Positions 4,001 through 52,555 of a stretch of DNA of 64,000 bases are shown one piece after another. Every line of letters begins with the position of its first letter. Positions within the stretch are counted from its first letter, which is position 1. A model generated the notes under the pieces. The model was not told the DNA's origin and ran no database searches. It worked only from the letters and a program-made list of their open reading frames with translations. The stretch lies in IMG/VR virus record IMGVR_UViG_3300031787_000001, positions 222,786-286,785 of that record; one strand, 5' to 3'. A program made the position numbers and the translations under genes.

Positions 4001-5232
4001 CCAGCATTTTTTCCGACAATTGTGTTACCATCTCCAGAAGTCGCATTTTGTCTTGTGTTGGTTCCGATATATACGTTGTTTCTACCTGTAAGTTGATTCA
4101 ATGCTGAACCATTTCCTATAAAAACATTGTCATCACCAAACGTCCCTGTTGTTGCACCAGTAAAATTAATTGCAACAGTATCACCAATTATACTATTAAA
4201 ACTACCTCTAATGAGTTTTGTTAAAGAATTATTACCAAAAACTGTATTTTTAACACCACTAGTGATTCCCGTCATTGAGGTGTTACCAACAACTAAGTTA
4301 GTTCTAACGTTAGATGTTGAAATTCTACCAGCATTTTTACCGATAAATAAATTTGCAAATTCTAATTCCGCGGGATTAGTTATAGATGATCTTATTTCAA
4401 ATAATATATTTCCCGACTCGTCTAATCCATTTAAAAATCTATCATTAATATTAGAAGTTCTTCTTAACGATAACGTATTTCCACTTAAATCAACAATCCT
4501 ATTTGACAATAGATAACCATCGACAGTATATATATTATCTATATTTGTTAAGTTAGATCCGTCACCATATAATGTTCCACCACTTATCGTTGTTGCCGAT
4601 ATTATATTAGAAAATAAAGTATTGAGATTTGTGTCTCCACTAACACTTAAATCACCATTAATGGTCAATCCTGTTAAATCGTTTATTGTAATAACAAACG
4701 AAGAATTGTTATTATCATTAATTGTAAGTGTATTATTTCCATAGGTGACTCCCGTAACAAAAATATTTGGGTCTATTGGAAGATTTTGATAAGTAGTCGC
4801 ACTTATTGTCGTTGCAATAAACCCGCCATTTAATGTGGTGTTACCCGTTATATTTAAATCACCATTAAGATCTAAATCACCATTAATTGTTAATCCTGTT
4901 AGTATGTTAAAAGATGCGGTTAATGTGTATCCCGACCTGTCGACTATTGTAAAAGTATTGTCACTATATGTAAATCCTGTGGTATAACGATCAAAATCGT
5001 ATTCAAAACCACTAACAGTTATCGTGTTACCACTATTGCTAGTTAGTGTTAAGACACCTTGACTAAATGATCCACTATTAAGATACAAATCACTTATTGG
5101 TGTACCTGACAAATATATATTCTCAGAATATATTGCATCTATAGGTCCATCAATTTTACCTATTTGAACCGTGTACCCCGAAGGTACGGTTATGGAGTCA
5201 ATTTGTGACCAATTTATCTTTTGTAATCCCAT
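1024..5232 (-). CDS. Large tail-fibre/adhesin-like virion protein
   Basis: 1402 aa, Gly/Ser/Thr/Asn-rich. Three TG(F/V)TY..N...I...LTGLTINGDL repeats, many FIG..AG beta-helix-type repeats, three GIG...P.N.LH...PVR..GLQ repeats. Confidence 0.8.
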   Translation of the reverse strand: MGLQKINWSQIDSITVPSGYTVQIGKIDGPIDAIYSENIYLSGTPISDLYLNSGSFSQGVLTLTSNSGNTITVSGFEYDFDRYTTGFTYSDNTFTIVDRSGYTLTASFNILTGLTINGDLDLNGDLNITGNTTLNGGFIATTISATTYQNLPIDPNIFVTGVTYGNNTLTINDNNNSSFVITINDLTGLTINGDLSVSGDTNLNTLFSNIISATTISGGTLYGDGSNLTNIDNIYTVDGYLLSNRIVDLSGNTLSLRRTSNINDRFLNGLDESGNILFEIRSSITNPAELEFANLFIGKNAGRISTSNVRTNLVVGNTSMTGITSGVKNTVFGNNSLTKLIRGSFNSIIGDTVAINFTGATTGTFGDDNVFIGNGSALNQLTGRNNVYIGTNTRQNATSGDGNTIVGKNAGFNNITGSNNVFIGLNAGRNETGSNLLYIENTTSSTPLIYGDFANDLLRFNGKVGVNVLPGTFQFDVNGTSRFSNTVQLDTVNLSTSDTKILSLSTGNTIQYRSLSDIISSVTGDTYVTGFTYNNSNKFTIFDNSGSTFSVLINELTGLTINGDLSVSGNTNLNYLEVNTISATTISGQTFYGDGRNLQGIPKWYAESDVIPTVYPYEKPYVITGSTGQGSFALGPNAQSLSFDQISFGDFAGRETTGASRSTFIGYGSGIRANDSDLSNFIGQSAGSDSKNSNNSNFIGIGAGQNSKNAGFSNFIGYNAGYNINGETIVGFDRQIRGFDSNFIGNLAGSGALYASGSTFIGTNAGSNANYARFSNFIGYLAGKDSTNASYSTLIGFNVGTPRFGFSKIGKNNIIIGNSITLPNGTTDSINIGGVLFGINTNFDTSGGSPSDSPTTTGKIGIGVVTPLNRLHVEDTIDPVRFVGLQSGTTETRILTSDNNGIIKYKNLSDITISGNYLPLSGGTVTDDVLFQSGITATTISGQTFYGVGSNKQVIYNNNGILSGSTGFTYDGTNVGIGTESPTNLLHITGSTDPVRIQGLQLSNDNNIVTVDSNGVLHYSPYSGLTNDKWISGGSFDNRYNILYLGYNTGGGFRIYLDITGNTGNTLVNASRYFISGSTPTGYVLVNGDRWYNTNNGIEYVWINDGNSSQWVQPATIGGGGGGTTTIGDYLVLSGLTANTINVNQIGISGDCVNDLYVSNIHSCSPLNINPLNEGDINFGSSTSGISIQLSEGKGGIGIGTRSPTNKLHIVGSENPVRIEGLQSGDTNNKVVTINNDGVLASSTLPQFASTLPVSFKLGFNGIPNYEVFGGTGVQNFGLLDRGMFVAFDLETALKLPHTTTATDYVYSFRVTTHEQFGGVQNNVGVRTVLASTAGEFPYNTIAPATYLSQTSTNYALQYSDVVVNVPKNYLGQPVYYIKFEIIMERFAGGSTSVIGANLRFN

Positions 5233-13631: not shown

Positions 13632-14153
13632 TTAATTATTTTTTCTTTTTCTAATTATTTCATTCATTGTGGTTGAAAATGTCTCATTAAACTTTTCCAA
13701 CTTTGTTATGATTTCTATCACATCTGTCTCAACTTTTAACATATCTGCATTCAAATAAAGTCCATTTTCATCACCCGCAATAAATACAAAATCAATATCT
13801 TGATCCGTTACCGTACCATCCAATCTTATTTGTTCTTGTGTAATTGTTAAACCCGGATCAAATTCAACTAAATTTGAAACTTGTGATTTAAAATTATCAA
13901 TTAATCCCGATATTGAGGTCTTATCTTCTTCAGAAATTTTCATATCAATTTCATCAGAAGAAACTATTTTAACGTCAACATCATTTATAACTGTTATATC
14001 ATCCTGAGTATCGGTATTATTATCTACGGTAGGTATTTCTTGTTCATCTTCTCTTAAAATGTTACCATAAATTTTATTACTTTCATTGATTCTCCTCAAT
14101 GTGTTTAACATTTTCTTTGTCTGATCATAATTTGACATTTGTTTGTTCTGCAT
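13632..14153 (-). CDS. Hypothetical protein, putative virion/internal
   Basis: 173 aa; INES and LRED motifs near the N-terminus. Confidence 0.7.
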   Translation of the reverse strand: MQNKQMSNYDQTKKMLNTLRRINESNKIYGNILREDEQEIPTVDNNTDTQDDITVINDVDVKIVSSDEIDMKISEEDKTSISGLIDNFKSQVSNLVEFDPGLTITQEQIRLDGTVTDQDIDFVFIAGDENGLYLNADMLKVETDVIEIITKLEKFNETFSTTMNEIIRKRKNN

Positions 14154-14748
14154 TTTTAAAAAATATATTAAAGTTAAATGAAGGGTTTATATCTGTATAA
14201 ATATCTGAAAAATTCGATTTACATGTTATCCCCCTAAAATTTCGAGCATTATTAAAAAATCCTTGTGAGGGTACTATTTGTTTATTTATACCGTGATTAT
14301 CACATAGTTTTTCACATAATTCGGAAAGGACAGATAATTGATCGTCGTTATATTTGTCCCAAAAATAGTGGTTTCTCCAATTTTTAACGAACGGTTCAGA
14401 TCTATATGGGTCTCCGATCCAATTATTTAAAAACCCATTTATTGTATTTTTATTTAACCACCCAAGATTTTCAATTGCTATTTTTATTATTTTTTTATCT
14501 AATTTATCGTCTTTAAATGTTCTTGAACTATAATTTGTGTCAAAAATTTGATATACCATACCTAATTTAGAGACAACAAAATGGGGCACATCTTCATATG
14601 CCCCATTTTTACGATATCTTATTTTATTTATGAAATCATCTACTCTTCTTTTGGTATCATAAAGTAGAATTTGACTTTTTTTCGTTTTTTTTCTAATTAT
14701 ATTAATTTTCGAATTATCTAAATTTTCTACGTTGTGAATTATTAACAT
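14125..14748 (-). CDS. N-acetylmuramoyl-L-alanine amidase (Amidase_2)-like protein, catalytically degenerate
   Basis: PHFVVSKLGMVYQIF, IKIAIENLG, Y.DDQL..L.EL...L, DINPSF fit the fold, but ILLYDT replaces the usual I.LHHT. Confidence 0.65.
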   Translation of the reverse strand: MLIIHNVENLDNSKINIIRKKTKKSQILLYDTKRRVDDFINKIRYRKNGAYEDVPHFVVSKLGMVYQIFDTNYSSRTFKDDKLDKKIIKIAIENLGWLNKNTINGFLNNWIGDPYRSEPFVKNWRNHYFWDKYNDDQLSVLSELCEKLCDNHGINKQIVPSQGFFNNARNFRGITCKSNFSDIYTDINPSFNFNIFFKNAEQTNVKL

Positions 14749-15169
14749 TTCTTAACACTTTTTTTACTGTACCTCCGTTATTGTTTGGATCTTCTCCATT
14801 TTTATTTGGTCCATAACTATAATAATATGGTATATGTGTGCCCTCGTTAGTAAATTTCATATCATCAATCTTATTGTCAATAGGATTTGAATCGTTTTCT
14901 TTAATTTCAGATTGAGTAATGTCTTCTTGAATTAAGTTTTCCGTATTTTTTTCTTCTTGGATTTCCTCAACTTTATTTTCAGATAAGGTTTCTTTAACTT
15001 CTTCTTGGATTTCTTCGATTTTAGGATCAATTTCTTTTTCGTTATTTAAATTATCGTTTGTTTCATCCTGAATTTGATTATTGATAATTTCTTCTTCAAT
15101 AATTTGATCTTTTTTTTCTATCGTTTCATTATTTTCTAACTTTGTTGAATTCTCTATTTGGTTTTCTAA
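14714..15169 (-). CDS. -1 frame extension (151 aa) of the upstream membrane protein
   Basis: Stop-free frame LENQIENSTKLENN...VKKVLRNVNNSQRRKFR* begins right after the A10 run at 15170-15179; same E/N/K/I composition as the upstream ORF tail. Confidence 0.75.
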   Translation of the reverse strand, partial: LENQIENSTKLENNETIEKKDQIIEEEIINNQIQDETNDNLNNEKEIDPKIEEIQEEVKETLSENKVEEIQEEKNTENLIQEDITQSEIKENDSNPIDNKIDDMKFTNEGTHIPYYYSYGPNKNGEDPNNNGGTVKKVLRNVNNSQRRKFR

Positions 15170-16254
15170 TTTTTTTTTTCTTCCTCTTCTTCTATTAATT
15201 TAGACTGTGGTATATTTTCATTTTGAACTTGTTCTTCAATTTTTTGTTCTTCTCTATCTATAAAATTATTTTCATTTGATTCAGATTCTATTTCTTCTAC
15301 TTGATCAATATTTTTATTTTCTTGGAAAATATTTTCCTCTTTTGATTCTATAGTGGAAAATTCTTCACTTTCAGAACGTTCAGTGGGCTCTATAGTGGAA
15401 TAATTTTGTTCTTCTTTTTTTGTGCTTTGATGAATTAAATCACCATCACTAATATCTTCACGTTCATGTTCGTGCACATATTCATTATTTGAGTTATTTT
15501 TTATTTCATTTTTTAATGAATCACCTTCACTTTCATCTTTTGAATTCTTTATTCTTTTTTTATCATTTACAATTTCATTGTCTGTTTTTTCAGTTTTTTT
15601 ATTGTCGCCATCAGAATTATTTATTTTATTTTCTTTACTTTTTTTTGTTATAAATTCTTCAATTTTTTGTAGTTCTTCTTCTGTTGGTGTGTATTTTTCA
15701 CTTAATTCCTTTTCCGCTTCGATAATAGCCGCCTCCCTACTTATTTTTTCTATATCAACAACAGGTTCAAGTGTCTGTGTTTTTTTTCTATCTTCTTCAG
15801 TAAATTTAACTAACATATGAAGAAACGATAACGAAATGATGGGAAGCATACCTCCAGCAAAAAACGCCAAAAATCTTTTATGACCAACTAGATCGGTGTT
15901 ATCTACACCCATAAACTCAACCATTGGGGAGACGAGTTCTATCCAATCTTTAAAAGATTTACTATCTATATCAATAAAGGAATAGGCAAAATAAATATTA
16001 CCAATAAATTGTACTAATGTAACTAACCCGAATGGGAAATATACTTTTTTACCCATATCAGCAGAAATGGCTGCAAGTGTAGATAACGCAGCAATTTCAA
16101 TACCTATTGAAAGATATATTGCCCAACTAACCGGATTAGATATTCCGTACCATTTAGTTACGTGTGAAATTGAAACTAACGCAACTGTGAAAATTGGTAC
16201 CAAAAAGGCACCAATGATCAAAAGTTTATAATTTTTACTTATCCAATTCTTCAT
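15166..16254 (-). CDS. Multi-pass membrane protein with long acidic C-terminal tail
   Basis: About four TM helices in the first 150 aa; ends EEEEEKKN at an A10 run. Confidence 0.8.
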   Translation of the reverse strand: MKNWISKNYKLLIIGAFLVPIFTVALVSISHVTKWYGISNPVSWAIYLSIGIEIAALSTLAAISADMGKKVYFPFGLVTLVQFIGNIYFAYSFIDIDSKSFKDWIELVSPMVEFMGVDNTDLVGHKRFLAFFAGGMLPIISLSFLHMLVKFTEEDRKKTQTLEPVVDIEKISREAAIIEAEKELSEKYTPTEEELQKIEEFITKKSKENKINNSDGDNKKTEKTDNEIVNDKKRIKNSKDESEGDSLKNEIKNNSNNEYVHEHEREDISDGDLIHQSTKKEEQNYSTIEPTERSESEEFSTIESKEENIFQENKNIDQVEEIESESNENNFIDREEQKIEEQVQNENIPQSKLIEEEEEKKN

Positions 16255-16258
16255 AATA

Positions 16259-16546
16259 TTATTTTAATTTACCTTCAAGAGTTGTGATTTCCTGATCAAT
16301 TTGTGTTTGTCTATTAACGTCCAAAATTTTACGATCAGTTGATTGTATCATTCTCTTTTCAGATTTAAGACCTTCGATTTGTAATCTTAAATCCAACTCC
16401 TTTTTATTGTAAGTAGAATCTTTTAGTTCTTTCATTTCTTTTCTGATTTTACTAATCTCTCTACTATCACCACAACTTTTAAAGAATGATAATAACATAA
16501 TCACAAATACAATAATTGTAAATTTTTCTTCGATAAACTTTTTCAT
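16259..16546 (-). CDS. Putative lipoprotein / spanin-like coiled-coil protein
   Basis: Hydrophobic stretch ending SFFKSC, followed by a coiled coil. Confidence 0.55.
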   Translation of the reverse strand: MKKFIEEKFTIIVFVIMLLSFFKSCGDSREISKIRKEMKELKDSTYNKKELDLRLQIEGLKSEKRMIQSTDRKILDVNRQTQIDQEITTLEGKLK

Positions 16547-16556
16547 ATTTTTTTAT

Positions 16557-17372
16557 TTATAAATAGTTAAATAGAGAATAACTCTCATTTCTTAATTTTT
16601 TTATTGCTTTATCTCTTAGTTGTCTTATTCTTTCTTTTGTACATCCGAATTGTTCTCCCAAGTCATCCAAATTAGATTCGACACCGGTTAAACCATAATA
16701 TCTTTCGATTATTGTTTTTTCTCTATCATCTAAAACACTTAACATCAATGAAACCTTTTTTTTGATTTCTTCTTTTGTGTTTAAAGAATTTTCAGGATTA
16801 TCGGCATTTTTATTTGGTACAATATCAATTATTTGGTCGCCGTCTTCATTTATCTCACTGTTCAAACTAATACAATAAGGTATACTAACATCAATAAAGT
16901 TATCGTTATTTTTGACCAAAAACATATCTTCGTCGTGTTCTACGTTTTTTTTCTGTTTCTGTGTTTCTTGAATAACATTTGATGGAATACGTATAGTTCT
17001 TGAATTTTCATTTAACGACGCTAAAATAGATTGTTTAACCCACCAAACAGCATAAGATATGAATTTAAATCCACTTGTTGGGTCGAACCTTTCTGCTGCT
17101 TTTATTAAACCTATATTACCTTCTGAAATTAAATCAAGTAATTCCAATCCTTGATTTTGATACATTTTAGCAACGGAAATAACAAATCTAAGATTACCTA
17201 CAACCAACTCATTTAATAATTTTCCTCTTTCGTTTTTAGATAAGTTTTTGTCTTTTAAAGTTTCGAAGATTTCTTCTTGTCTTTCATGACTGATTACAGG
17301 AATCTTTTTAAGGTCTTTAATGTAGGATTGTAATTCTTCCGTGTTCGGTGCAATCGACTTTTTTAGTTGCAT
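16557..17372 (-). CDS. RNA polymerase sigma70-family (RpoD/SigA-like) factor
   Basis: NLRFVISVAK, DLISEGNIGLIKAAERFD, FKFISYAVWWVKQSI, region 4 TKERIRQL..KAIKKLR. Confidence 0.95.
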   Translation of the reverse strand: MQLKKSIAPNTEELQSYIKDLKKIPVISHERQEEIFETLKDKNLSKNERGKLLNELVVGNLRFVISVAKMYQNQGLELLDLISEGNIGLIKAAERFDPTSGFKFISYAVWWVKQSILASLNENSRTIRIPSNVIQETQKQKKNVEHDEDMFLVKNNDNFIDVSIPYCISLNSEINEDGDQIIDIVPNKNADNPENSLNTKEEIKKKVSLMLSVLDDREKTIIERYYGLTGVESNLDDLGEQFGCTKERIRQLRDKAIKKLRNESYSLFNYL

Positions 17373-17438: not shown

Positions 17439-18068
17439 TTATTTTTTTAACTTAATCTTCCAATAAATTCCCGCCTGTATAGATGTGGTAAAGTTATTAT
17501 TTAACCCGATACCCAAACTATACATGTGATCTGTTTTGGTTTTCAACACTAAGGTAGGTCCAAAATAATTAAAACCAACTCTTCTATCTGCCCCGATCTG
17601 ACCACCAACATAAAGTTGAGGTTTTGGTAACTCTTTTACAATGATACTATCACGTACATGAACCTGATTTATGTTAGACTTAAAAGTCCTAGAAACAATT
17701 TTATTTTTCTGTATTGTATCAGTAATTTGAACTGTTCCCAAACTATCTTCAAGTTTAATAGTATCTTTATAAATGTATTTAGCGAAGTAATCTTTTAAAA
17801 TTTCTCCAGTATCAACATTACTAGGTACGTCAACATAAATTGGTTTTTCAACATATATTGTTTCACCTTGTTTATATATTGTCTGTGTTTTTGTTATATA
17901 CTGTGTGTCCCTTATTCTTTTAATGACCTCATACTTTTTACCATCTACTTTTATTATTTCACCGGGTTTTGGTTGAGGTTTGGGTGTACACATCTTCAAC
18001 AATAATATAACAATAATTAAAACCGCAATTAGTAATGTCTTAAAATCTAATTTTAATAAATTTCTCAT
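17439..18068 (-). CDS. Membrane-anchored/lipoprotein envelope protein (spanin-like)
   Basis: N-terminal TM followed by Cys, beta-rich D-T/S segments, C-terminal amphipathic strands ending GIYWKIKLKK. Confidence 0.55.
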   Translation of the reverse strand: MRNLLKLDFKTLLIAVLIIVILLLKMCTPKPQPKPGEIIKVDGKKYEVIKRIRDTQYITKTQTIYKQGETIYVEKPIYVDVPSNVDTGEILKDYFAKYIYKDTIKLEDSLGTVQITDTIQKNKIVSRTFKSNINQVHVRDSIIVKELPKPQLYVGGQIGADRRVGFNYFGPTLVLKTKTDHMYSLGIGLNNNFTTSIQAGIYWKIKLKK

Positions 18069-24993: not shown

Positions 24994-25030
24994 AAAAAAA
25001 AATCCCCCGGAGACACCAACTCCGAGGGAT
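24994..25030 (-). terminator. Intrinsic terminator
   Basis: Minus strand AUCCCUCGGAG-UUGGUGU-CUCCGGGGGAU followed by a U tract. Confidence 0.75.
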
Positions 25031-47240: not shown

Positions 47241-47956
47241 ATTATTGTGTATTAAAAAAATAATTCATTAATCCATGAATCGCTAACCATGGTTGTGTAA
47301 TATTTTCACAAATTCCATCTTCGATAGTTCTTTTATTATATTCATAAGCCATACCACAACTTTCCCAATTTATCACTTCATTATCTGTTCTTCTGTTTAT
47401 TTCGATCATTGTTTGTTCGTCTCGTTCCATACCTCTTTGACTTTGTGGTAATTTAGATATTAAATTTTGACTATAATTTTTATCTTTACATGAACACATT
47501 TTCCCATGTTTAAATAATCTAAATAAAGAAGTAAAATAATTAGCAATCGTGTCTGGTGCAACTATTTTAATTCCATCTAATTTTTGTGACATTTCAACTA
47601 ATTTCCTATTTATTGTTCCAACAAAACAAGTACCGAATAACATTGATCCGTTTTCCTTTAACATTGGTTTTAATTGTAACAATAATTCAAAAACTTTATC
47701 GTCACCTTCTTTTGTGTGTACTAAATGTTTACCTTTACCATTTGTCATTATGATTATGTAATCTAATTTATTTGTATATTTTTTTTTAAAAATATTTAGA
47801 TCGTGTATCACATCATCAATTTTCCGATATGGACCAATGGAATGTAAAAATTTAGAAAAAATTGTAAATAATCCATTATCTGTTTTATTGTTATCAATAA
47901 AAATTATCAAATGGTTTGGTCTTCTTTTACTAAATAAATCTTTTATAAACATATTA
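47203..47956. repeat. Perfect 42-bp direct repeat (47203-47244 and 47915-47956)
   Basis: tttggtcttcttttactaaataaatcttttataaacatatta occurs at both positions. Confidence 0.95.
47242..47952 (-). CDS. Tandem paralog A, DUF4347/caspase-fold-like
   Basis: YIIIMTNGKG...MLFGTCFVG; likely start 47952 (MFIKDLFSKRRPNH). Confidence 0.6.
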   Translation of the reverse strand: MFIKDLFSKRRPNHLIIFIDNNKTDNGLFTIFSKFLHSIGPYRKIDDVIHDLNIFKKKYTNKLDYIIIMTNGKGKHLVHTKEGDDKVFELLLQLKPMLKENGSMLFGTCFVGTINRKLVEMSQKLDGIKIVAPDTIANYFTSLFRLFKHGKMCSCKDKNYSQNLISKLPQSQRGMERDEQTMIEINRRTDNEVINWESCGMAYEYNKRTIEDGICENITQPWLAIHGLMNYFFNTQ

Positions 47957-50900: not shown

Positions 50901-52555
50901 ATACCAAAAAGAGCGGCCGTCACAAATTCTTTTATAAATAAAGAAATCACGTTACCGATATATTCAATAAAATTTAATACCGTTAAAATGAAAAATTGAA
51001 ATCTATGATTTCTAACCGCATCGTTTACAGGAAAATAATTATTAACATTTTCACAATCATCTTTTTCTTGTGGCCAGTTTTCTTTAATACCAATAAAAGA
51101 TTCTCTTCTATCCTTTTTAAAAAAACTAAATGCCCTTTCTAATGCACTTGTTTTATAATATTTGTTTATAAATTCACTAACGGTGTATATTCTACCGTAT
51201 CTAAATTGGTAAAAATAGTCTTGTGGAACCCCGTAGTTATCACTAGTAATTGCGTCCACACTTGTTCCGGCAATTTCTTTTCTTGCGTCAGGAGGATAAT
51301 CATCAATATTAGTACTAAATGAATATGATCTACTATCAATTGTTGTTGGTGATCCTTGAAAACTTGTATCACCTATATGATATTCCCTAACATTTGGTAC
51401 TAAGAATTTACCCGTAAATCTATTTCTAGCACCAGTATCTTCAGTCAATGAAAAACGAAATCTATAATTACCTTGTGTGGCAATACCGATATTCTTGTCA
51501 TTTGTTTCATAATATTCACCAAACTCATTTGTGGCAATATATTTCATATTCATTGGTATTCTAAAAAAGAATACACCATTCTCATCTATTGTACTATCTA
51601 TATCAAAAAATTCAAGTATTGGTCTGTCTATATTTGGTGATCCGTCAGGATTTTTCTCATAATTTCCAGTAAATCTAATTGATTCGACATCACCTTTGAA
51701 TGTTATCAATCTACATTTTTCACCCATTTGGTTGTCAACGTTACAGTTCACCCTTAACGCATCTTTACCTGAATCGGTAAAACTACCTCCCGCAATTATT
51801 GCATACGGGTCAATTCTTACTCCTTGAGAAGATAAATCAAAATCAACTCTAGTGATTGCAATTTGACATAACTCTTGGTTGCCCCAAAAAGGATAAACCT
51901 CAATAGATTTATCATAACTAACAATTTGTGGTAAAGAATCAATATCCGACGCACTTTTATATGTGTATTTATTTACGAATTTTTCTTCAGATATACCATC
52001 GTAAATAAAATCATATGGTACTAATGATTGACATCCCGCATCAGACATATCTAGGTCAATATGTAATGTTTGGTTACCTAATGGTACCCCCCATATCATA
52101 AAATCACCCGCTTCATTTGTTTTTACGGTGTACCTATAATATTTTTCAAAAACCTCTAAAACTTCCTCTCTATTTAAGATGTCAGATTGATCAGGAAATG
52201 TACCTGTTGGTACGTGTCCTGTATGTTGTTTTCTAGCCGGTAATAGGTTATATCTATAATTTGAATCGTTTCTTTGATCTATTGATCTATAAGGATACAA
52301 CTCAGATAAAACAGGATCATTTTCATCAACATCTGATATTGGTACAAAAATAGAAACTCTGGCATTTGGGAGACCAAAACCATTATTAACCGATATTCTA
52401 CCAACAACAACACCATAATCACCACAAAATGATGAGTAAGCCTCTTGTTGTGAAAATTTTAAAGATAGTATTTCTAGTAAATCGTAGTCTTGTTTTAATT
52501 CTACGGTTATTTTTTGATCTACACCTATGTCTGTATAAATTCTATGTTTTTGCAT
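47954..52555 (-). CDS. Large baseplate-associated structural protein
   Basis: 1533 aa after gp6. N-terminal Ig/carboxypeptidase-regulatory-like segment (GRISVNNGFGLPNARVSIF, KTNEAGDFMIWGVPLG) and Cys-rich repeats. Confidence 0.7.
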   Translation of the reverse strand: MQKHRIYTDIGVDQKITVELKQDYDLLEILSLKFSQQEAYSSFCGDYGVVVGRISVNNGFGLPNARVSIFVPISDVDENDPVLSELYPYRSIDQRNDSNYRYNLLPARKQHTGHVPTGTFPDQSDILNREEVLEVFEKYYRYTVKTNEAGDFMIWGVPLGNQTLHIDLDMSDAGCQSLVPYDFIYDGISEEKFVNKYTYKSASDIDSLPQIVSYDKSIEVYPFWGNQELCQIAITRVDFDLSSQGVRIDPYAIIAGGSFTDSGKDALRVNCNVDNQMGEKCRLITFKGDVESIRFTGNYEKNPDGSPNIDRPILEFFDIDSTIDENGVFFFRIPMNMKYIATNEFGEYYETNDKNIGIATQGNYRFRFSLTEDTGARNRFTGKFLVPNVREYHIGDTSFQGSPTTIDSRSYSFSTNIDDYPPDARKEIAGTSVDAITSDNYGVPQDYFYQFRYGRIYTVSEFINKYYKTSALERAFSFFKKDRRESFIGIKENWPQEKDDCENVNNYFPVNDAVRNHRFQFFILTVLNFIEYIGNVISLFIKEFVTAALFGIAEAIASSGVSNDAAARTFRRGKEFQFTNIFRLQLLVYPDCYDCNEDNEETPVQTPPVAPTADDYKNKPPVATNFTVEEKYEIRRNTDICRKYVFRNYSSSACTLTYIDCDDVSRTIYLPVEENPSNGIEVCAKKGQTITIPPGFGSQVTATQQSPGAYCSGNADDSLYFTYPCDAYTFKNIGLSAFTINNFVDCNNASGNTITVPTGTSGNTFVFCAKRGQSFTIPPQFTGVTYTTSSTSAYCNRCGGTGIDVFSNYTGSTVDGAIMNRKYLLEITPLIGTDPQYIFIGCGTNYPIIYSGQYGRWKVGGGVYSVLASFLADETNTRYDTPIQNSVHEDHGCVFPISKLIYVEDCSDVSAPDPNLPSGIEEEGCNKYDFIIDTKWTEDGGGGSMNLQAFVFPLYNGGTPLQEYAAARNVLMGCRPGDCYPTNSSTYNVGCISNGSIGAGTSLWDQLDGNYSTNILQSHPDPCFSGVPCNVGAVASIYAKWPTDPNGGFRNATTRCIVNGAYAGEVKKKGPYYCDQGLTQRGTLSGYSEFRDGVYSIVPLAGNTFTMLKSFRRRKLFHKLMCGGVVSYTFNDSWLLGSLYFFQFMKRGSNRFCKECVYKVQDATGLHFYYRSTPYSPSYSASETQYDYDPATGTQLGVNTSLTSDYANKTKGFYGQVRAIDYGANFSTPLPFMNLIGDLFNGLNYKREINFPTTIIDLGPRNTWINEICTDPELDVNCSISRSIGATSYKGLDDLMEYIVQSKEIKERGKLDVQDLFDARANGLIDGDIAQLMNFNTQSGIFPFEYEESFSPYTAQYSTVFDGKGPVGLDFVFSEDDPDTVTFERAGELIRKCLNEPTRLGDVSQRVPYYMWDTIGHGFGESTTGNIGSDEGQSYYSGKIYNQKIQLMKGNMNPDPNANPLDDDYFDPYVLPPIRDCIDAGSGEKKYNDNYKEHTVNGVKRHTMEIGIPFHYYFGLRKGKTAFDKFIEFYGPF

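What the first reader, a model, noticed from the sequence alone, without database searches (positions are those of the whole stretch)
14714..16254. Probable programmed -1 frameshift or transcriptional slippage at an A10 run, giving two isoforms of a membrane protein
Seen: the 362-aa ORF ends GAA AAA AAA AAT TAG, with A10 at 15170-15179. The -1 frame continues stop-free for 151 codons to 14714. It has the same acidic composition, ends in a basic tail (KKVLRNVNNSQRRKFR) and fills an otherwise empty ~420-bp gap in a genome with almost no intergenic DNA. Established: A9+ runs cause RNA polymerase slippage and A-AAA-AAN heptamers cause -1 ribosomal shifts; phage examples are mostly tail chaperones and capsid proteins. 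Inference: a ~513-aa long form and a 362-aa short form of an inner-membrane protein are made, or the run is a phase-variable switch.
Basis: partly seen in the sequence, partly recalled or inferred. Interest (0 to 1): 0.72.

Follow-up and report, generated by a model that had tools for sequence, protein, structure and literature searches.

The report
Conserved poly-A recoding site, phage membrane protein
A run of ten A's splits a membrane-protein gene of an uncultured freshwater jumbo phage into two reading frames, and the same split recurs in dozens of diverged relatives, so it is a programmed slippage site that makes a short and a long protein from one gene, not an error.

Summary
The minus-strand ORF 16254..15166 (362 aa) ends GAA AAA AAA AAT TAG. 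The A10 run is at 15170-15179, and the -1 frame then stays open for 151 codons to the stop at 14716-14714 (1 of 200,000 shuffles does this).

Comparative data show it is programmed. All 33 distinct relatives with a split gene carry an A9-A11 run (A10 in 29). In each, a 0-frame stop follows within 0-4 codons, and a -1 extension of 50-150 codons is under purifying selection, has no conserved start codon and nearly always ends in a basic tail. Distant relatives (35-45% identity) show the same layout. Single-ORF relatives confirm the junction and mostly also keep an A10.

Fourteen assemblies of two lineages all read A10, so this is not an assembly error.

The mechanism is most likely insertion of one A by the host RNA polymerase. 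The evidence is the conserved run length, the absence of a downstream RNA structure and the lack of Shine-Dalgarno use. A -1 ribosomal shift on A_AAA_AAA is not excluded, and no RNA read spans the run.

The protein has an N-terminal four-helix, DUF2637-like membrane domain, an acidic linker and a basic tail. The tail's coding sequence contains the start codon of the downstream amidase. This is a new member of a known kind of recoding.

The parts
15166..16254 (-). Frame-0 ORF, 362 aa: the short isoform. It comprises the membrane domain, the acidic linker and the ending ...EEEEEKKN*.
   Evidence: the identical ORF occurs in four other IMG/VR contigs
15790..16254 (-). N-terminal membrane domain, about aa 1-155, with four long hydrophobic helices plus a short amphipathic one. 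It is highly conserved (mean column identity 80% across the viral loci).
   Evidence: alignment A1; AlphaFold2 model with pLDDT 91.5; DUF2637-like fold matches with TM 0.46-0.60
15181..15789 (-). Acidic, low-complexity cytoplasmic linker in frame 0. It carries conserved short motifs (YTPTEEELQKIEEF, EEFSTIE...ENIFQ).
   Evidence: dN/dS of the linker in relatives is 0.10-0.66
15170..15179 (-). A10 slippery run (T10 on the template strand): the recoding site.
   Evidence: A10 in 29, A11 in 3 and A9 in 1 of 33 distinct split genes; also in distant relatives L082-L084
15166..15168 (-). Frame-0 stop codon TAG, one codon after the run.
   Evidence: the 0-frame stop lies 0-4 codons after the run in every split relative, against a median of about 23 codons in the +1 frame
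14714..15178 (-). The -1 frame extension: KKK + 151 codons + TAA. It forms the C-terminal part of the 513-aa long isoform.
   Evidence: purifying selection in relatives; first ATG/GTG/TTG only at codon 106; contiguous with ORF0 in in-frame relatives
14717..14764 (-). Basic C-terminal tail KKVLRNVNNSQRRKFR, conserved as K-x-[VI]-[LIS]-x-[ND]-V...RRR-x-x-R. More distant members have K[RV]L[ST]Yx[KR].
14125..14748 (-). Downstream Amidase_2 gene (207 aa, putative endolysin). Its ATG (14748-14746) lies inside the Asn-Val codons of the tail, giving a 35-nt overlap with the extension.
16259..16546 (-). Upstream 95-aa gene with an N-terminal hydrophobic segment ending in a lipobox-like LLSFFKSC, followed by a coiled coil. 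Its position is conserved in relatives.

Best explanation
The A10 run is a conserved, programmed recoding site, and one gene yields two proteins with the same N-terminus.

- Standard expression stops one codon after the run. It gives the 362-aa short form: a four-helix inner-membrane domain plus an acidic cytoplasmic linker.
- In a fraction of transcripts the host multisubunit RNA polymerase, directed by a phage sigma factor, slips on the T10 template and inserts one extra A. Normal translation of those A11 mRNAs continues for 151 more codons. It gives the 513-aa long form, which carries the conserved basic tail.
- Only ribosomes making the long form cross the start codon of the downstream amidase, which lies inside the tail's coding sequence.

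Shown: the anatomy; its conservation; coding selection on the extension; the junction in natural in-frame relatives; the stability of A10 in DNA assemblies.

Inferred: that slippage happens at the RNA-polymerase step rather than on the ribosome; its efficiency (15-55% at comparable bacterial sites); and any function of the isoform ratio.

Confidence that this is programmed recoding by some mechanism is about 0.88. Confidence that the mechanism is mainly transcriptional is 0.6.
For: 1. Conservation of the layout. All 45 split loci (33 distinct genes, 43-100% aa identity to the window protein over the matched part, L005-L008 being identical; pairwise dS 0.3 to above 1.5 between related loci) have a run of 9-11 A's. 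Each has a 0-frame stop 0-4 codons later and an open -1 frame of 49-150 codons. The +1 frame closes after a median of about 23 codons.
2. Breadth. Distant relatives (35-45% identity) have G-A10-GTA[AG] and a 54-63-codon -1 extension. The family has 866 clusters at E<=1e-3 (50%-identity clusters). 38 of the best 150 representatives and 106 of the best 120 homologs end right after KK[K/N].
3. The extension is coding. dN/dS is 0.07-0.84, like the frame-0 linker. It has no conserved start codon, and none at all in L014, L045 and L049.
4. The junction exists in nature. L068 (96% identical membrane domain) has G-A11-TTAGAAG and a single 424-aa ORF reading ...EDEKKKLEAHEE.... L009, L010, L033 and L035 are also single ORFs with the same tail.
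5. Run length points to RNA polymerase. Length is held at 10 although a -1 ribosomal shift needs only 7 bases. In-frame relatives mostly also keep A10, and there a +1A slip stops within 0-3 codons at one run in four of the five in-frame lineages. Runs of 9 A/T slip efficiently in bacterial RNA polymerase, whose hybrid is 9-10 bp (PMC5009743). The tssM genes of Citrobacter rodentium (out of frame, A11, 20-25%) and Yersinia (in frame) show the same two configurations (PMC4256274).
6. No ribosomal stimulator. There is no conserved RNA structure downstream of the run (window MFE 0.0; mean z -0.6). The genome does not use Shine-Dalgarno sequences (2 of 197 ORFs).
7. Polymerase. No phage RNA polymerase was found; a sigma-70 gene sits two genes upstream.
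8. DNA is stable. A10 is seen in 6 assemblies of this phage and in 8 of another lineage.
Against: There is no direct RNA or protein evidence. The only RNA data are contigs from poly-A-selected metatranscriptomes. They cover parts of the extension (14925-15094) and of ORF0 (15364-15608), but none spans the run.

The run contains a proper in-phase A_AAA_AAA heptamer, and some relatives have A_AAA_AAG followed directly by a stop. A ribosomal -1 shift would therefore give the same product.

The host and its polymerase are unknown, and slippage rates are extrapolated from Proteobacteria and Thermus.

Lysine codons are 80% AAA in these genes, so part of the run's purity is compositional.
Confidence: 0.6

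Rival explanations
1. Programmed -1 ribosomal frameshifting. Ribosomes slip back one base on the in-phase A_AAA_AAA heptamer (A_AAA_AAG in some relatives) just before the 0-frame stop. The mRNA is unchanged and the same 513-aa product results.
For: An X_XXY_YYZ heptamer is present in the 0 frame in every split member, whatever the phase of the run. The required direction is always -1. The nearby 0-frame stop resembles the dnaX layout described in PMC5009743. L014, L050 and L082-L084 have A_AAA_AAG followed immediately by a stop.
Against: No stimulator is conserved. The 60 nt downstream in the window fold to 0.0 kcal/mol and the mean z over 30 relatives is -0.6. The genome does not use Shine-Dalgarno pairing. 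Seven bases would suffice for this mechanism, yet the run is held at 9-11 (A10 in 29 of 33). It is also kept at 10 in in-frame relatives. Ribosome sliding on poly-A gave little product at A9 or A10 and became robust at A11 in E. coli (PMC4363877).
Confidence: 0.25
2. DNA-level phase variation. The run changes between A10 and A11 during phage replication, so a population holds 'short-only' and 'long-only' genomes. The isoforms would come from different genomes rather than from one template.
For: A close relative (L068, 96% identical membrane domain) has A11 at the same site and phase and is in frame. Split members vary between A9, A10 and A11. The split or in-frame state changed at least 4 times on the family tree.
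Against: Consensus length is constant within lineages: 6 of 6 assemblies of this phage and 8 of 8 of the L020 lineage read A10. Split members with A11 or A9 still need the -1 frame. Most in-frame relatives differ by indels in the flanks, not in the run. The split state persists across synonymous saturation, which a freely toggling switch would not predict.
Confidence: 0.07
3. Artefact or decay. Either the true sequence is A11 and the assembly is wrong, or the gene is a frameshifted pseudogene.
For: Homopolymers are error-prone, and one relative does read A11 in frame.
Against: Independent assemblies from different samples agree on A10. In-frame relatives assembled in the same way also read A10, so there is no systematic under-call. 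Thirty-three distinct genes are broken at the same kind of site and always in the same direction. The extension is under purifying selection.
Confidence: 0.03
4. Two separate genes: the 362-aa membrane protein and an independently initiated downstream ORF.
For: Gene callers sometimes call a small ORF in the gap, for example a 51-aa gene in L083 and the 48-aa ORF 14714..14860 here.
Against: In the window the first ATG/GTG/TTG of the open frame is at codon 106 of 154. Start positions are not conserved, and three relatives have none. The whole 151 codons are open and under selection. Relatives encode the two parts as one ORF.
Confidence: 0.02

Closest known systems
tssM of the type VI secretion systems of Citrobacter rodentium (tssM1) and Yersinia pseudotuberculosis (tssM3); transcriptional frameshifting at a poly-A run (Gueguen et al. 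2014, PMC4256274)
   Same: Both are inner-membrane proteins with a poly-A run (A11 in tssM1) a few bases before a premature stop. Extra A's in the mRNA give a full-length form beside a truncated one. One relative is out of frame (slippage makes the long form) and another is in frame (slippage makes the short form), the same two configurations seen in this phage family.
   Different: The proteins are unrelated and the setting differs: a phage gene next to an amidase rather than a secretion machine. In tssM the slippery site is rare among homologs. Here it is the majority state of a large clade and reaches distant relatives. Slippage is demonstrated experimentally for tssM and not here.
Shigella flexneri spa13 (also mxiE, mxiA, spa33); transcriptional slippage in type III secretion genes (reviewed in PMC5009743)
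   Same: Slippage adds a C-terminal extension (112 aa in Spa13). The end of the extension's coding sequence overlaps the start of the next gene (spa32), whose expression depends on the slippage. Here the extension's last 35 nt contain the amidase start codon.
   Different: The proteins are unrelated. Coupling to the downstream gene is only inferred here from the overlap. The run composition and length in spa13 were not compared.
dnaX of Thermus thermophilus (slippage at a 9-base A/T run) and of E. coli (-1 shift at A_AAA_AAG)
   Same: Two N-terminally identical products are set by a lysine-codon A-run, with stops close by in the alternative frame. In the in-frame phage relatives, slippage would truncate the protein as in Thermus. 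The reversed arrangement, where the long form needs the shift and a 0-frame stop follows the site directly, is also noted for some bacterial dnaX genes.
   Different: E. coli dnaX uses an upstream Shine-Dalgarno-like element and a downstream hairpin. Neither is present here. The protein and its function are different.
Phage tail-assembly chaperone G/GT-type -1 frameshift
   Same: It is a phage gene in which a minority of products carries a C-terminal extension encoded in the -1 frame, and it is conserved across many phages.
   Different: G/GT uses a heptamer of the G_GGA_AAG kind and a ribosomal shift, and it lies upstream of the tape-measure gene. This gene encodes a membrane protein next to an amidase and has a 10-base homopolymer.
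DUF2637 (PF10935) membrane proteins of actinobacterial plasmids and phages
   Same: The predicted four-helix membrane fold is similar. Ten of the 30 best AlphaFold-DB cluster matches are DUF2637 proteins with TM 0.33-0.60. Many of these carry a cytoplasmic C-terminal region with a DNA-binding-like domain. Many phage relatives here have a TacA1/ribbon-helix-helix-like stretch in the linker.
   Different: There is no Pfam match even at E<=1. Sequence identity in the structural matches is 9-17% and the Foldseek E-values are only 0.008-0.17. The function of DUF2637 is itself unknown.

Membership tests
Transcriptional-slippage recoding sites (Thermus dnaX, Shigella mxiE/spa13, Citrobacter tssM1) | Homopolymeric A or T run of about 9 or more bases inside the coding sequence | tested here: met
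   A10 at 15170-15179. The run is 9-11 bases in all 33 distinct split relatives.
Transcriptional-slippage recoding sites (Thermus dnaX, Shigella mxiE/spa13, Citrobacter tssM1) | Inserting one or a few bases in the run joins two long open frames, and the arrangement is conserved in relatives | tested here: met
   +1A joins 359 codons to 154 codons. The same holds in 45 loci and in distant relatives.
Transcriptional-slippage recoding sites (Thermus dnaX, Shigella mxiE/spa13, Citrobacter tssM1) | The mRNA population is heterogeneous in run length while the DNA is not | tested here: inconclusive
   DNA is uniformly A10. No RNA contig spans the run, and only contigs, not reads, were available for the RNA runs.
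Transcriptional-slippage recoding sites (Thermus dnaX, Shigella mxiE/spa13, Citrobacter tssM1) | Both protein products are detected | not testable with these tools
   No proteomic data are available. This needs a western blot or mass spectrometry.
-1 programmed ribosomal frameshift cassettes | X_XXY_YYZ heptamer in the 0 frame | tested here: met
   GA A_AAA_AAA AT: the A_AAA_AAA heptamer is in phase. It is present in all split relatives.
-1 programmed ribosomal frameshift cassettes | Stimulatory element: a downstream hairpin or pseudoknot, or an upstream Shine-Dalgarno-like sequence at fixed spacing | tested here: not met
   The downstream 60 nt fold to MFE 0.0 in the window, and the mean z is -0.6 over 30 relatives with no shared structure. 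The genome lacks Shine-Dalgarno use. GAGG-like upstream strings follow from Glu/Asp codons and have no fixed spacing.
Phase-variable contingency loci (DNA repeat-length switching) | Repeat length differs among genomes of the same lineage or within a population, toggling the frame | tested here: not met
   At consensus level, 6 of 6 and 8 of 8 assemblies in two lineages read A10. One sister lineage reads A11 in frame. Within-population variation could not be tested because no raw reads of this phage were found.
DUF2637 (PF10935) | Match to the Pfam model above its gathering score | tested here: not met
   No Pfam hit at E<=1 for the window protein. None at E<=0.1 for 10 distant relatives.
DUF2637 (PF10935) | Same four-helix membrane fold | tested here: inconclusive
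   The model has pLDDT 91.5. Matches to DUF2637 clusters have TM 0.33-0.60 and E 0.019-0.17. The Atlas feature score is 0.74, which is a lead only.
Holins (phage lysis-timing membrane proteins) | Membrane protein with at least one transmembrane segment and a charged C-terminus, encoded next to the endolysin | tested here: met
   Four hydrophobic helices and a basic tail. An Amidase_2 gene without a signal or transmembrane segment lies immediately downstream and overlaps. This holds in nearly all of the viral loci of both clades that reach that far; L047 is an exception.
Holins (phage lysis-timing membrane proteins) | Small size (usually under 150-220 aa), and membrane permeabilisation or lysis timing shown | not testable with these tools
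   The size (362/513 aa with a 350-aa acidic region) is atypical. There is no match to a PHROG lysis family. Function needs expression and lysis assays.

The most novel reading that the evidence does not exclude
The slippage rate at A10 may work as a built-in lysis timer. The short and long isoforms would act as a holin/antiholin-like pair that differ at the cytoplasmic C-terminus rather than at the N-terminus, as classical dual-start holins do. Only the slipped (long-form) reading would carry ribosomes over the amidase start codon embedded in the tail. Endolysin translation would then be coupled to the same stochastic polymerase event. Lineages would tune the ratio by switching between out-of-frame and in-frame configurations while keeping the A10.
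Probability: 0.15. Interest if true: 0.8.

Novelty: new member of a known kind. Interest (0 to 1): 0.6.

Why it matters
Gene callers split or truncate this gene in thousands of metagenomic phage contigs, so its conserved C-terminal tail goes unannotated.

The family offers a natural evolutionary series for studying poly-A slippage. The same A10 occurs in out-of-frame and in-frame settings, with A9 and A11 variants. This would show how slippage sets isoform ratios in phages whose hosts apparently do not use Shine-Dalgarno pairing (probably Bacteroidota), where recoding signals are hardly studied.

It extends conserved phage recoding beyond tail chaperones and capsid proteins to a membrane protein next to the endolysin. 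It also suggests a testable link between polymerase slippage and the expression of lysis genes.

Tried and rejected
- Nucleotide search of the GenBank phage collection found nothing. A protein search found one distant uncultured 462-kb phage, LR756500.1. Its homolog is a plain 306-aa ORF with no run and no amidase neighbour. No cultured relative and no host could therefore be named.
- Read evidence. The only raw-read run (X21) held no reads of this phage. The RNA runs are kept as contigs and none spans the run. The short pieces touching 15162-15204 are 90%-level matches that continue into unrelated sequence, so I ignored them. The single metagenome pattern scan found only one 286,787-bp contig, probably the source record.
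- Pfam, PHROGs and NCBIfam gave no family for either part of the protein. PDB fold search gave nothing.
- Internal initiation helped by the A-rich tract was considered, because initiation regions in this genome are A-rich at -14 to -10. I rejected it because no start codon follows the run in the -1 frame.
- No terminator-like site lies in the 417-nt gap, and promoter-like sites occur no more often than in shuffles.
- A nucleotide alignment of the window against its in-frame sister L009 was too diverged to place individual indels. Only the net length difference of the flanks could be read.
- The statistical weight of 'pure A' lysine codons alone is modest, since 80% of Lys codons are AAA. The argument therefore rests on the whole layout, not on codon purity.
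Full report
**Where the window lies.** The window is bases 222786-286785 of a 286,785-bp IMG/VR virus record. The record is linear, estimated 86% complete and 30% GC. Runs that hold this sequence are lake and freshwater metagenomes. No tRNA gene is in the window. No RNA-polymerase gene was found in the record, although the single-subunit family search had no positive control. A sigma-70 family gene lies at 16557-17372. Only 2 of 197 long ORFs have a Shine-Dalgarno-like core upstream. G is depleted and A enriched at -14 to -10. From general knowledge this is the pattern of Bacteroidota and their phages, but the host is an inference.

**Check of the observation.** On the minus strand the ORF 16254..15166 (362 aa) ends GAA GAA AAA AAA AAT TAG, with A10 at 15170-15179.
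- The frame one base upstream reads KKK, then 151 sense codons and a TAA at 14716-14714. It ends GGTVKKVLRNVNNSQRRKFR.
- The other two frames of that stretch hold 9 and 27 stops. One of 200,000 shuffles stays open.
- The extension is as acidic as the frame-0 linker (D+E 0.25 against 0.29), and its last 20 residues are basic.
- The run itself is not unusual in this genome: 6 runs of 10 are seen, against about 10.6 runs of 10 or more expected. It is, however, the only 10-run that clearly lies inside coding sequence and the only run joining two long frames. The other five sit where no long frame spans them.

**Relatives.** A scan of viral contigs returned 63 loci.
- Four carry the identical gene with A10. 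With the window's own record, a Logan contig of run X1 (1582 nt, depth 15, no differences) and a JGI contig, every assembly of this phage reads A10.
- Of 48 distinct genes, 33 are split, plus L040, which is cut by a contig end. Each split gene has a run of A's (A10 in 29, A11 in 3, A9 in 1), a 0-frame stop 0-4 codons after it, and an open -1 frame of 49-150 codons. The +1 frame closes after a median of about 23 codons.
- All but one of the extensions (L047) end in a tail of the form K-x-[VI]-x-x-[ND]-V-x-N-[ST]-x-R-R-x-x-R.
- They have no conserved start codon. In the window the first is at codon 106, and three relatives have none.
- In eleven groups of related loci, dN/dS of the extension read in the -1 frame is 0.07-0.84. 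The frame-0 linker gives 0.10-0.66 and the membrane domain 0.02-0.07, while dS runs from 0.3 to above 1.5.
- A profile search of 1.84 billion representatives found 866 clusters at E<=1e-3, and a word-indexed search found 4254 proteins. 106 of the best 120 homologs and 38 of the best 150 representatives stop right after KK[K/N].
- Three representatives only 35-45% identical to the window protein were fetched. All have G-A10-GTA[A/G] followed by a 54-63-codon -1 frame ending ...IKDxxLSxIKxFKK.

The layout is therefore old, widespread and always in the same direction. This excludes assembly error, random decay and a separate downstream gene.

**In-frame relatives.** Some members are single ORFs with the same tail: L009 (521 aa), L010 (406), L033 (514), L035 (464) and the deep clade L053-L064 (about 313 aa).
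- These also carry A10 runs in the linker; L009 and L010 carry two each. In four of the five in-frame lineages, an extra A at one of the runs would stop translation within 0-3 codons. L035 is the exception, at 12 and 25 codons.
- On a tree of the membrane domain the split/in-frame state changes at least four times. The window's sister, L009, is in frame.
- L009 differs from the window by indels in the flanks, not in the run.
- L068 is 96% identical in the membrane domain. It has A11 at the same site and phase and encodes one 424-aa protein reading ...EDEKKKLEAHEE... This is the junction predicted for the window's long form...EEEEEKKKLENQIE....
- Within lineages the consensus run length does not vary: 6 of 6 assemblies of this phage and 8 of 8 of the L020 lineage read A10.

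**Mechanism.** Three processes could yield the long form: one extra A added by RNA polymerase, a -1 ribosomal shift on A_AAA_AAA, or ribosome sliding on poly-A.
- Bacterial RNA polymerase slips efficiently on runs of 9 A or T, and its RNA-DNA hybrid is 9-10 bp (PMC5009743). Measured rates at comparable sites are 15-55% (PMC4256274).
- The run here is held at 9-11 although a ribosomal shift needs only seven bases. It is kept in in-frame relatives too, where it would produce a truncated form. This is the pair of configurations described for tssM in Citrobacter and Yersinia.
- No RNA structure is conserved downstream. The window's 60 nt fold to 0.0 kcal/mol. Shine-Dalgarno stimulation is implausible in this genome.
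- Ribosome sliding in E. coli gave little product at A9 or A10 and was robust at A11 (PMC4363877).

I therefore favour transcriptional slippage (0.6) over a ribosomal -1 shift (0.25). Both may contribute. No RNA contig spans the run, so this is not settled.

**What the protein is.**
- Residues 1-155 are highly conserved. They are modelled with pLDDT 91.5 as four long helices plus a short amphipathic one.
- The positive-inside rule places both termini, and hence the linker and tail, in the cytoplasm (inference).
- The best AlphaFold-DB matches are DUF2637 proteins at TM 0.33-0.60 with weak E-values. No Pfam, PHROG or NCBIfam model matches, and nothing is solved in the PDB.
- The linker is acidic, variable in length and studded with conserved short motifs. 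In many relatives it matches the TacA1 ribbon-helix-helix family PF08681.
- The next gene is an Amidase_2 protein without a transmembrane segment. In the main clade its ATG lies inside the invariant [N/D]-V codons of the tail, giving a 32-38 nt overlap. In the deep clade the overlap is ATGCTTGA.
- The preceding gene encodes a 92-95-aa protein with a lipobox-like LLSFFK[S/G]C and a coiled coil. Its stop overlaps the membrane gene's start in L053.
- A 209-aa protein with LLLKMC followed by a proline-rich stretch lies two genes further upstream.

This neighbourhood resembles a lysis cassette. That makes a holin-like or lysis-regulating role the best guess for function, but it rests on synteny alone, and the protein's size is atypical for holins.

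**Comparison with known systems.** The closest analogues are the tssM genes (an inner-membrane protein, a poly-A run before a stop, two length variants, both configurations in nature), Shigella spa13 and dnaX. [quoted passage not shown] The mechanism is thus of a known kind. New here are the gene family, its breadth and conservation in uncultured large freshwater phages, and the position next to the amidase. Full-text searches found no description of recoding in a holin-like phage membrane protein and no functional work on DUF2637.

**Verdict.** Programmed recoding is very likely (about 0.88), and the polymerase step is the more likely mechanism. This is a new member of a known kind, of moderate to high interest.

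Noticed in passing
window 14714-14748 (minus strand); L009-L065 equivalents: The amidase start codon ATG (14748-14746) lies inside the conserved Asn-Val codons of the membrane protein's tail. The result is 32-38 nt of dual coding in the main clade (35 nt here). In the deep clade the overlap is only 8 nt (ATGCTTGA). Only long-form translation crosses the amidase start, which suggests translational coupling as in Shigella spa13/spa32.
   Followed up: partly
window 16259-16546 and 17439-18068 (minus strand); L053 3726-4004: The 95-aa gene just upstream has a lipobox-like LLSFFKSC (LLSFFKGC in L053) followed by a coiled coil. The 209-aa gene further upstream has LLLKMC followed by the proline-rich TPKPQPKPGE. 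With the amidase these look like a lysis cassette (spanin-like parts), interrupted by a phage sigma-70 gene at 16557-17372.
   Followed up: partly
linker of relatives, e.g. L012 about 4570-4680; window about 15640-15700: Many homologs carry a stretch RLRLSEEDLKxLExxLLNPPxPNExLKxAA that matches Pfam PF08681 (TacA1 antitoxin, ribbon-helix-helix). The window protein keeps only a short version (YTPTEEELQKIEEF). This suggests a membrane-anchored protein with a DNA- or protein-binding module.
   Followed up: no
window about 15300-15400 and relatives: The motif pair (E/N)FSTIE(P/S)...ENIFQ is repeated twice and conserved across the family inside an otherwise fast-evolving acidic linker. Other motifs (DFDGFVPEPFATPEEV, ELGLYDEPFDNP, LYWExDDxNPNQVIYDLENNKTIIP) occur in subsets of relatives. 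They look like short linear binding motifs.
   Followed up: no
window 14578-14609 (minus strand): A 14-pair inverted repeat (AAAATGGGGCATATGAAGATGTGCCCCATTTT) lies inside the amidase ORF and was flagged as terminator-like. It spans the conserved NG.YEDVPHF codons.
   Followed up: no
whole genome G000; window 24994-25002 and 47779-47787: Several 9-base A/T runs lie inside long open frames elsewhere in the genome (G000 positions 51323, 63897, 138908, 198992, 247779, 270564). These could be further slippage-prone sites. The five other 10-base runs sit where no long open frame spans them, one directly ahead of a 427-codon ORF. That fits the A-rich translation-initiation regions of this genome, which lacks Shine-Dalgarno use.
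   Followed up: partly
L047 4941-5166: One split relative (A11) has a -1 extension of 74 codons that lacks the basic tail, and no amidase follows it. It may be a degenerate or rearranged copy.
   Followed up: no
L009 4794 and 5353; L010 4767 and 5046; L022 4629; L042 4640: Some relatives carry a second A9-A10 run earlier in the linker, at about aa 210-265. There a +1A slip would stop translation within 0-3 codons, so more than two isoforms may be made.
   Followed up: partly
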